In this document: positions 12,848-13,034 of the stretch, piece after piece
Layout of the letters: each line of letters begins with the position of its first letter
How positions within the stretch are numbered: the first letter of the stretch is position 1
Assembly: GCA_013265495.1 (NCBI GenBank)
Contig: MU059953.1
Coordinates: 4,860,501-4,924,500, forward strand
Direction: 5' to 3'
DNA length: 64,000 nt
Source: Vicugna vicugna
Lineage: Eukaryota
Position numbers and translations under genes: made by a program
The notes under the pieces: generated by a model
What the model was told of the DNA's origin: nothing
What the model saw: only the letters and a program-made list of their open reading frames with translations
Databases searched by the model: none

Positions 12848-13034
12848 CTGCTGTACCCACCACGGCCCCCTGCCCCCGACCACACACTCACTCTCTTTGC
12901 CTTTCTCCTTGTTCTTGAGCTGCTGCAGCTTCTGCTCCCGACTGCTGTACCCACCAGGGCCCCCTGCCCCCGACCACACACTCACTCTCTTTGCCTTTCT
13001 CCTTGTTCTTGAGCTGCTGCAGCTTCTGCTCCCG
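12848..13034 (-). repeat. Tandem duplication (94-nt period, 2 copies) of the last 49 nt of the 151-nt HDAC4 exon, its donor and 44 nt of intron
   Basis: 12848-12940 versus 12942-13034: 92 of 93 nt identical (c12863 versus g12957), separated by a single a at 12941. Confidence 0.97.

What the first reader, a model, noticed from the sequence alone, without database searches (positions are those of the whole stretch)
12848..13034. Tandem duplication gives an HDAC4 exon a second, identical splice donor 94 nt downstream; its use frameshifts the gene
Seen: the last 49 exonic nt, the AGA|GTGAGT donor and 44 intronic nt are duplicated (92/93 identical, one extra base at 12941). The donors at 12985 and 12891 are identical from -49 to +28. 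The duplication ends share TGCTG microhomology (ctgctg at 12848, gtgctg at 13035), as expected for slippage. Using the second donor lengthens the exon from 151 to 245 nt and shifts the frame to ...[53 protein letters not shown]. The TAA falls at 4791-4789, 66 nt before the next junction. Splicing out the 44-nt GT-AG stretch (12985-12942) would also frameshift (+50 nt), and that stretch is very short with no pyrimidine tract. Known: with duplicated equal donors, the one nearer the 3' splice site is often preferred, modulated by SR proteins and hnRNP A1; stops more than about 50-55 nt upstream of a junction trigger NMD; HDAC4 is dosage-sensitive for skeletal development. Inference: either a hypomorphic allele, a lineage-specific unproductive-splicing dosage switch, or an assembly error. 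Any escaping protein would keep the Q-rich domain but lose MEF2 binding and the deacetylase domain.
Basis: partly seen in the sequence, partly recalled or inferred. Interest (0 to 1): 0.78.

Follow-up and report, generated by a model that had tools for sequence, protein, structure and literature searches.

The report
Probable false duplication at HDAC4 donor
A 94-base stretch covering the end of an HDAC4 coding exon and its splice donor really is written twice in this camelid sequence. It is most likely an assembly error rather than a real gene-dosage switch, and only sequencing reads can settle it.

Summary
Bases 12848-13034 are a two-copy tandem repeat of period 94 (92/93 identical plus one junction base). 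It duplicates the last 49 nt of an HDAC4 exon, the AGA|GTGAGT donor and 44 intronic nt. The exon (13136-12986, minus strand) is 49/50 identical to solved HDAC4.

The duplication is derived. Wild Bactrian camel has one copy, as do gray whale, another mammal from a Logan contig, and about 40 vertebrate read-through ORFs. It is the largest window-specific insertion in 40.8 kb aligned to camel.

Three points argue for an assembly artefact (about 0.78).
- Published work shows that two identical donors splice almost wholly at the intron-proximal one. A real homozygous copy would therefore nearly abolish an essential gene.
- The junction is not a clean slippage product.
- Unchecked notes on this genome list many similar frameshifting tandem duplications in essential genes (TPO, HCN1, AKT1, CSNK1D).

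A real young allele (about 0.17) and a fixed splicing-coupled dosage switch (about 0.04) are not excluded. No llama or alpaca reads or second assembly could be reached.

The parts
12986..13136 (-). HDAC4 coding exon (151 nt, Gln-rich coiled-coil, about aa 113-163), phase-1 end
   Evidence: 49/50 identical to PDB HDAC4 7xuz_B. tblastn with P0022, P0029 and P0025. Acceptor and donor contexts.
12942..13034 (-). Repeat copy 1: last 49 exonic nt, the authentic donor (intron starts at 12985) and 44 intronic nt. Carries the derived C at 12957.
   Evidence: camel comparison
12941..12941 (-). Single extra junction base (T on the minus strand) between the copies, which makes the period 94 rather than 93
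12848..12940 (-). Repeat copy 2: 49 nt of exon-derived sequence, a second AGA|GTGAGT donor (intron would start at 12891) and 44 intronic nt. Carries the ancestral G at 12863 and runs on into the rest of the intron.
4723..4843 (-). Next HDAC4 exon (121 nt; [20 protein letters not shown]..., MEF2-binding region), donor CGG|GTAAGT
4789..4791 (-). TAA reached in the shifted frame if the 12891 donor is used, 66 nt upstream of the 4723 exon junction
28476..28724 (-). Upstream HDAC4 exon ([10 protein letters not shown]...HEHIK), intact
   Evidence: 100% identical to the Camelus ferus model P0052
59161..59205 (-). Part of a further upstream HDAC4 exon ([14 protein letters not shown])

Best explanation
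This is most likely a false tandem duplication made during genome assembly. Two overlapping pieces of consensus covered the same 93 nt at the end of this CAG-rich, GC-rich HDAC4 exon. They could have been contig ends, haplotypes, or two merged assemblies. They differed at one base and were laid end to end instead of being collapsed, which left one stray junction base. On this reading the animal's real HDAC4 has one exon end and one donor, as in camel and all other vertebrates examined, and the gene is spliced normally.

Shown: the duplication exists in the sequence, it is derived, and it would be strongly deleterious if used. Inferred: that it arose in the assembly rather than in the germ line.
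For: (1) Single copy in the closest reachable relative. Both window copies align to the same Camelus ferus stretch, L005:43804-43898, with no gap nearby. Gray whale (L004), the mammal behind a Logan contig (L001) and about 40 vertebrate read-through ORFs also have one copy.

(2) It is the only window-specific insertion longer than 21 nt in 40.8 kb aligned to camel, yet it sits on one of very few exon junctions.

(3) Expected consequence if real. [quoted passage not shown] Here that is the frameshifting donor. From established knowledge, HDAC4 is essential and dosage-sensitive, so a fixed or homozygous copy is hard to reconcile with an otherwise intact gene.

(4) The junction is not the clean microhomology product, having an extra base and a substitution. 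The one internal mismatch is what would stop an assembler from merging an overlap.

(5) False duplications at contig boundaries of about read length, including false exon gains, are a documented class (PMC8081667; PMC9516828). The published hybrid alpaca assembly used 2x100-bp reads, 454 and Sanger data and merged two assemblies with Metassembler (PMC6598621). It is not established that the window comes from that assembly.

(6) As a lead only, unchecked earlier notes on this genome list many near-perfect tandem duplications that break exons of essential genes: TPO 80 bp, HCN1 161 bp, AKT1, CSNK1D, SLC6A19 440 bp, PRKAR1B 62 bp, NKD2 37 nt, MUC2 295 bp.
Against: There is no N run or gap between or near the copies, whereas most documented false duplications flank a gap. 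A contig built from a de Bruijn graph can only contain junction k-mers that are present in reads, so the error would have to come from a merging, consensus or polishing step. Which assembly and pipeline produced the window is unknown.

The window itself is not rich in such repeats. There is only one other, 30x2 at 7452-7511. Real tandem duplications with a non-templated base at the junction do occur. No reads, second alpaca or llama assembly, or transcripts could be reached, so nothing here tests the artefact directly. The genome-wide pattern rests on unverified AI notes with no baseline from other genomes.
Confidence: 0.78

Rival explanations
1. A real, young germ-line tandem duplication, private to or polymorphic in the sequenced animal's population and probably heterozygous. 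On the carrier allele the two identical donors compete. Use of the downstream one adds 94 nt, shifts the frame and sends the mRNA to nonsense-mediated decay, which makes a hypomorphic or null HDAC4 allele.
For: The sequence as given contains it with no gap. The exon is CAG/CTG-rich with short repeats that favour slippage or misrepair (family D1). Short tandem duplications are a common class of real insertions, and a single inserted base at the junction fits end-joining repair. The frame and NMD consequences are verified. The proximal-donor preference is documented.
Against: The prior is very low for a loss-of-function structural variant in a highly constrained gene of a healthy reference animal. 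One substitution between the copies suggests an age of about 3 My if it is a true mutation. That rough figure uses the roughly 6% divergence from camel and is hard to square with a deleterious allele persisting. The same genome reportedly carries many comparable exon-breaking duplications, and they cannot all be real alleles.
Confidence: 0.17
2. A real duplication fixed in South American camelids that acts as a built-in unproductive-splicing valve. The upstream donor gives functional HDAC4. The downstream twin gives an NMD substrate. The ratio, set by SR proteins, hnRNP A1 and U1 availability, tunes HDAC4 dosage.
For: If the one difference between copies (12957 C derived, 12863 G ancestral) is a true substitution, it fits an age of the order of the Lama/Vicugna split. 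The four HDAC4 exons seen in the window are intact, so if the duplication is real the gene has tolerated it. The architecture is that of a classical competing-donor substrate.
Against: There is no transcript evidence of either junction. No protein in the database carries the frameshifted tail. With identical sites the proximal donor is expected to dominate, which would cripple the gene rather than tune it. Nothing marks copy 2 or the spacer as selected. The duplication is absent in camel. All arguments for an artefact apply here too.
Confidence: 0.04

Closest known systems
False homotype or heterotype duplications in vertebrate genome assemblies, including false exon gains (Rhie et al. 2021, PMC8081667; Ko et al. 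2022, PMC9516828)
   Same: Near-identical adjacent copies of sequence from one locus. The size is of the order of a short read. The copies differ by one base, as haplotypes or error-bearing consensus would. The repeat hits an exon and creates a spurious gene defect. It is absent from related genomes.
   Different: Documented cases usually have an assembly gap between the copies and are often kilobases long. Here the copies are separated by a single called base and are only 94 nt long. Read depth and k-mer evidence, which define the class, could not be examined.
Experimental substrates with duplicated identical 5' splice sites (Eperon/Hertel type; Hodson et al. 2012, PMC3413131: C174C, G176G, Ad1CC)
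   Same: Two identical donors in tandem upstream of one acceptor. G176G uses AGG/GUGAGU and the window has AGA/GUGAGU. The spacing is of the same order (94 versus 174-176 nt).
   Different: Those are engineered in-vitro substrates with short introns. Here the downstream intron is about 8 kb, the choice would be made in vivo under exon definition, and the existence of the second site in the animal is itself in doubt.
Alternative splicing coupled to NMD (unproductive splicing, as in SR-protein genes)
   Same: Use of the alternative site shifts the frame and places a stop more than 50-55 nt before a downstream junction.
   Different: Known cases are conserved and often ultraconserved, are supported by transcripts, and are autoregulated. 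This one is absent from the sister lineage, has no transcript support, and has no sign of selection on the second site.

Membership tests
False assembly duplication | Near-identical adjacent copies of a sequence that is single-copy in related genomes | tested here: met
   92/93 identity. Single copy in Camelus ferus, gray whale, a Logan mammal contig and about 40 vertebrate ORFs.
False assembly duplication | Assembly gap or contig boundary between the copies | tested here: not met
   No N anywhere in the window; only one extra base at 12941. A closed or merged boundary cannot be excluded, because the contig layout (AGP) is not available.
False assembly duplication | Half or abnormal read depth, no reads spanning the junction, junction k-mer absent from raw reads | not testable with these tools
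   No reads are available, and no llama or alpaca contigs were found in any collection.
False assembly duplication | Part of a genome-wide excess of similar errors | tested here: inconclusive
   Earlier unchecked notes list a dozen or more exon-breaking tandem duplications in about 400 windows. This window holds only two tandem duplications of 25 nt or more at 95% or better.
Microhomology-mediated (slippage) germ-line tandem duplication | Seamless junction whose period equals the spacing of the flanking microhomology | tested here: not met
   The TGCTG motifs are 93 nt apart but the period is 94. Relative to the clean product the junction has one substitution and one extra base.
AS-NMD regulatory switch | Alternative site yields a premature stop more than 50-55 nt upstream of an exon junction | tested here: met
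   TAA at 4791-4789, 66 nt before the 4723 junction.
AS-NMD regulatory switch | Evolutionary conservation of the alternative site | tested here: not met
   Absent from Camelus ferus and all other species examined. Other South American camelids could not be tested.
AS-NMD regulatory switch | Transcripts using both sites, with the unproductive one stabilised when NMD is blocked | not testable with these tools
   No RNA data. No database protein carries the frameshifted tail, which is only a weak negative.
HDAC4 (class IIa histone deacetylase) gene | Exon encodes the N-terminal glutamine-rich domain with HDAC4-specific sequence, flanked colinearly by other HDAC4 exons | tested here: met
   PDB HDAC4 at 49/50. 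PF12203 on all homologues. Colinear exons at 59.2, 28.7, 13.1 and 4.8 kb.

The most novel reading that the evidence does not exclude
The duplication is real and fixed in llamas, alpacas and their wild relatives. It gives HDAC4 two identical competing donors, so that a constant or regulated share of transcripts is destroyed by NMD. That would be a young, lineage-specific dosage valve on a master regulator of bone and muscle development, and a natural in-vivo version of the classic duplicated-donor experiment.
Probability: 0.04. Interest if true: 0.55.

Novelty: not a real feature. Interest (0 to 1): 0.15.

Why it matters
If it is an artefact, the value is practical. This HDAC4 locus, and apparently many other exons in this assembly, carry false short tandem duplications. 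These would mislead gene annotation, pseudogene calls and selection scans, so the assembly needs a read-based screen for them.

If it were real, it would be a rare natural case of two identical splice donors competing in an essential, dosage-sensitive gene. It could be tested directly with RNA-seq junction counts.

Tried and rejected
Five routes to independent camelid evidence were tried.
- Two protein-database searches used ORFs that read through the exon and the junction: 180 aa and 69 aa. These would have found Logan or other contigs from llama or alpaca reads with one or two copies. No camelid hit came from either.
- An exact-pattern scan of metagenome contigs with the 24-nt intron stretch found no match.
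- Exact look-ups of two nearby ATG ORFs found nothing on record.
- The last protein search used a full-length HDAC4 (P0063, region 95-215) to find the window's own and other camelid annotated proteins. The 120 rows listed were almost all primates and rodents, no camelid sequence was among them, and no searches remained.
- The paper describing VicPac4 is not held, and searches for Metassembler-specific duplication errors gave nothing useful.

Three ideas were considered and rejected.
- A simple heterozygous de Bruijn bubble laid out in tandem is unlikely, because the mismatch would then sit near the middle of the unit. It lies 78/93 along.
- Splicing of the 44-nt GT..AG stretch as a mini-intron is unlikely, because it is far below the usual mammalian minimum intron length and also frameshifts.
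- A chance repeat is excluded by the TRF score of 367.

Full report
**What is in the sequence.** On the minus strand the window carries four colinear HDAC4 exons. They lie at about 59205-59161, 28724-28476, 13136-12986 and 4843-4723 (tblastn with three HDAC4 fragments; splice contexts). The exon in question is 13136-12986, 151 nt long. It is 49/50 identical to the solved HDAC4 chain 7xuz_B, E=2.8e-20. It ends AGA|GTGAGT in phase 1.

Bases 12848-13034 form a two-copy tandem repeat. Copy 1 is 13034-12942, then one base at 12941, then copy 2 at 12940-12848. The copies are 92/93 identical, with TRF period 94 and score 367. Each copy holds the last 49 exonic nt, the donor and 44 intronic nt. The only mismatch is at +29 of the intron (12957 C against 12863 G), so the donors are identical from -49 to +28. 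The window has no N and no soft-masking.

**Consequences, recomputed.**
- The donor at 12985 joined to 4843 gives the normal ...[25 protein letters not shown]... reading.
That stop lies 66 nt upstream of the 4723 junction, so the transcript would be an NMD substrate.
- Removing 12985-12942 (44 nt, GT..AG) adds 50 nt and also frameshifts.

The observation and its arithmetic are therefore confirmed. One refinement concerns the end motifs. The TGCTG motifs are 93 nt apart, while the period is 94. The junction differs from the clean slippage product by one substitution and one inserted base.

**Is it ancestral?** No. A representative-library search with the upstream exon found P0052. This is a 494-aa chimeric ab initio model from Camelus ferus (GCA_000311805.2, scaffold KB017912.1). 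Its pseudo-exons flank the region of interest. Its locus, L005, is colinear with window 55317-11531 at about 94% identity.

Both window copies align to one camel stretch, L005:43804-43898, with no gap nearby. At the variable site the camel has G, as in copy 2, so the C of copy 1 is derived.

Gray whale (L004) and the mammal behind a Logan contig (L001) also have one copy. So do about 40 read-through ORFs from other vertebrates.

Across 40.8 kb aligned to camel, the other window-specific insertions are only 12-21 nt long. In the whole 64 kb only one other two-copy tandem repeat of 25 nt or more at 95% identity or better exists, the 30x2 repeat at 7452-7511. The camel locus has none.

**What would happen if it were real.** Hodson et al. 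2012 showed that pre-mRNAs with two identical strong 5' splice sites about 175 nt apart splice almost wholly at the intron-proximal site. The distal site gains only when U1 is limiting (PMC3413131). Here the proximal site is the frameshifting one.

From established knowledge, HDAC4 loss is lethal in mice and haploinsufficiency is pathogenic in humans. A homozygous or fixed duplication would therefore be expected to be strongly deleterious. Yet all four exons seen here are intact.

If the single difference between the copies is a true substitution, a rough age can be estimated. The roughly 6% divergence from camel and a split of about 16 My (my own figure; PMC13751797 says more than 11 My) give a rate near 1.8e-9 per site per year. 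That puts the duplication at about 3 My, with a Poisson range from under 0.1 to over 15 My. Such an age fits poorly with a deleterious allele.

**Why an assembly artefact is the best reading.**
- False duplications at contig boundaries, of about read length, are documented, and they include false exon gains (PMC8081667; PMC9516828).
- The one internal mismatch is what prevents an overlap from being merged, and the stray junction base is what an imprecise join leaves behind.
- The published hybrid alpaca assembly combined 2x100-bp Illumina, 454 and Sanger data in MaSuRCA. It then merged the result with an older assembly using Metassembler (PMC6598621). Whether the window comes from that assembly is not known.
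- Earlier notes of this scan call the genome alpaca- or llama-type. My camel comparison at about 94% identity is consistent with that.
- Those notes also list many near-perfect tandem duplications that break exons of essential genes: TPO active-site exon 80 bp, HCN1 161 bp, AKT1, CSNK1D exon 1, SLC6A19 440 bp, PRKAR1B 62 bp, NKD2 37 nt and MUC2 295 bp. They are unchecked AI notes with no baseline from other genomes, so they are a lead only. Still, one healthy animal could hardly carry all of these as real alleles.

**What speaks against the artefact.**
- There is no gap between the copies.
- A graph-based contig cannot invent a junction k-mer, so a merging, consensus or polishing step would have to be responsible.
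- This window is not itself rich in such repeats.
- Real tandem duplications with a non-templated base at the junction do occur.

**What could not be done.** No reads, transcripts or second assembly from South American camelids could be reached. The decisive test therefore remains open.

**Verdict.**

| Reading | Probability |
|---|---|
| Assembly artefact | about 0.78 |
| Real young, probably heterozygous, hypomorphic allele | about 0.17 |
| Fixed unproductive-splicing dosage valve | about 0.04 |

Interest is low unless reads prove the duplication real.

Noticed in passing
window:7452-7511: Exact 30-nt x 2 tandem duplication in the HDAC4 intron (TRF score 120). It is the only other two-copy tandem repeat of 25 nt or more at 95% identity or better in the window. 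It lies outside the camel locus, so its ancestry could not be checked.
   Followed up: partly
window:4723-4843: The MEF2-binding-region exon reads ...[20 protein letters not shown], where every mammalian and reptile HDAC4 retrieved has ...AHRNLNHCISS... (N>S and I>M). This could be a camelid-specific substitution or an error. The camel locus does not reach this exon.
   Followed up: no
L005 (Camelus ferus KB017912.1), whole locus; protein P0052: The deposited 494-aa camel gene model is a chimera. It uses one genuine HDAC4 exon ([10 protein letters not shown]...HEHIK) plus intronic pseudo-exons, and it skips the QQQELL exon altogether.
   Followed up: partly
window:1-64000: Strong strand asymmetry on the + strand: A 15866 versus T 11947 and C 18588 versus G 17599. 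On the transcribed HDAC4 sense strand this is T>A and G>C, as expected for transcription-associated mutation bias across a long gene. GC is 56.5% and CpG observed/expected is 0.54.
   Followed up: no
window:26255-26311: GC-rich 21-nt minisatellite, 2.9 copies, 87% matches, in the intron between the 28.7-kb and 13.1-kb exons.
   Followed up: no
window:13013-13138: The exon itself is internally repetitive, with nine imperfect copies of a GCTGCT/CTCCAG-rich unit of about 36 nt and TRF period 27. This reflects the heptad-like Q/E/L-rich coiled coil. Such sequence invites both replication slippage and mis-assembly.
   Followed up: partly
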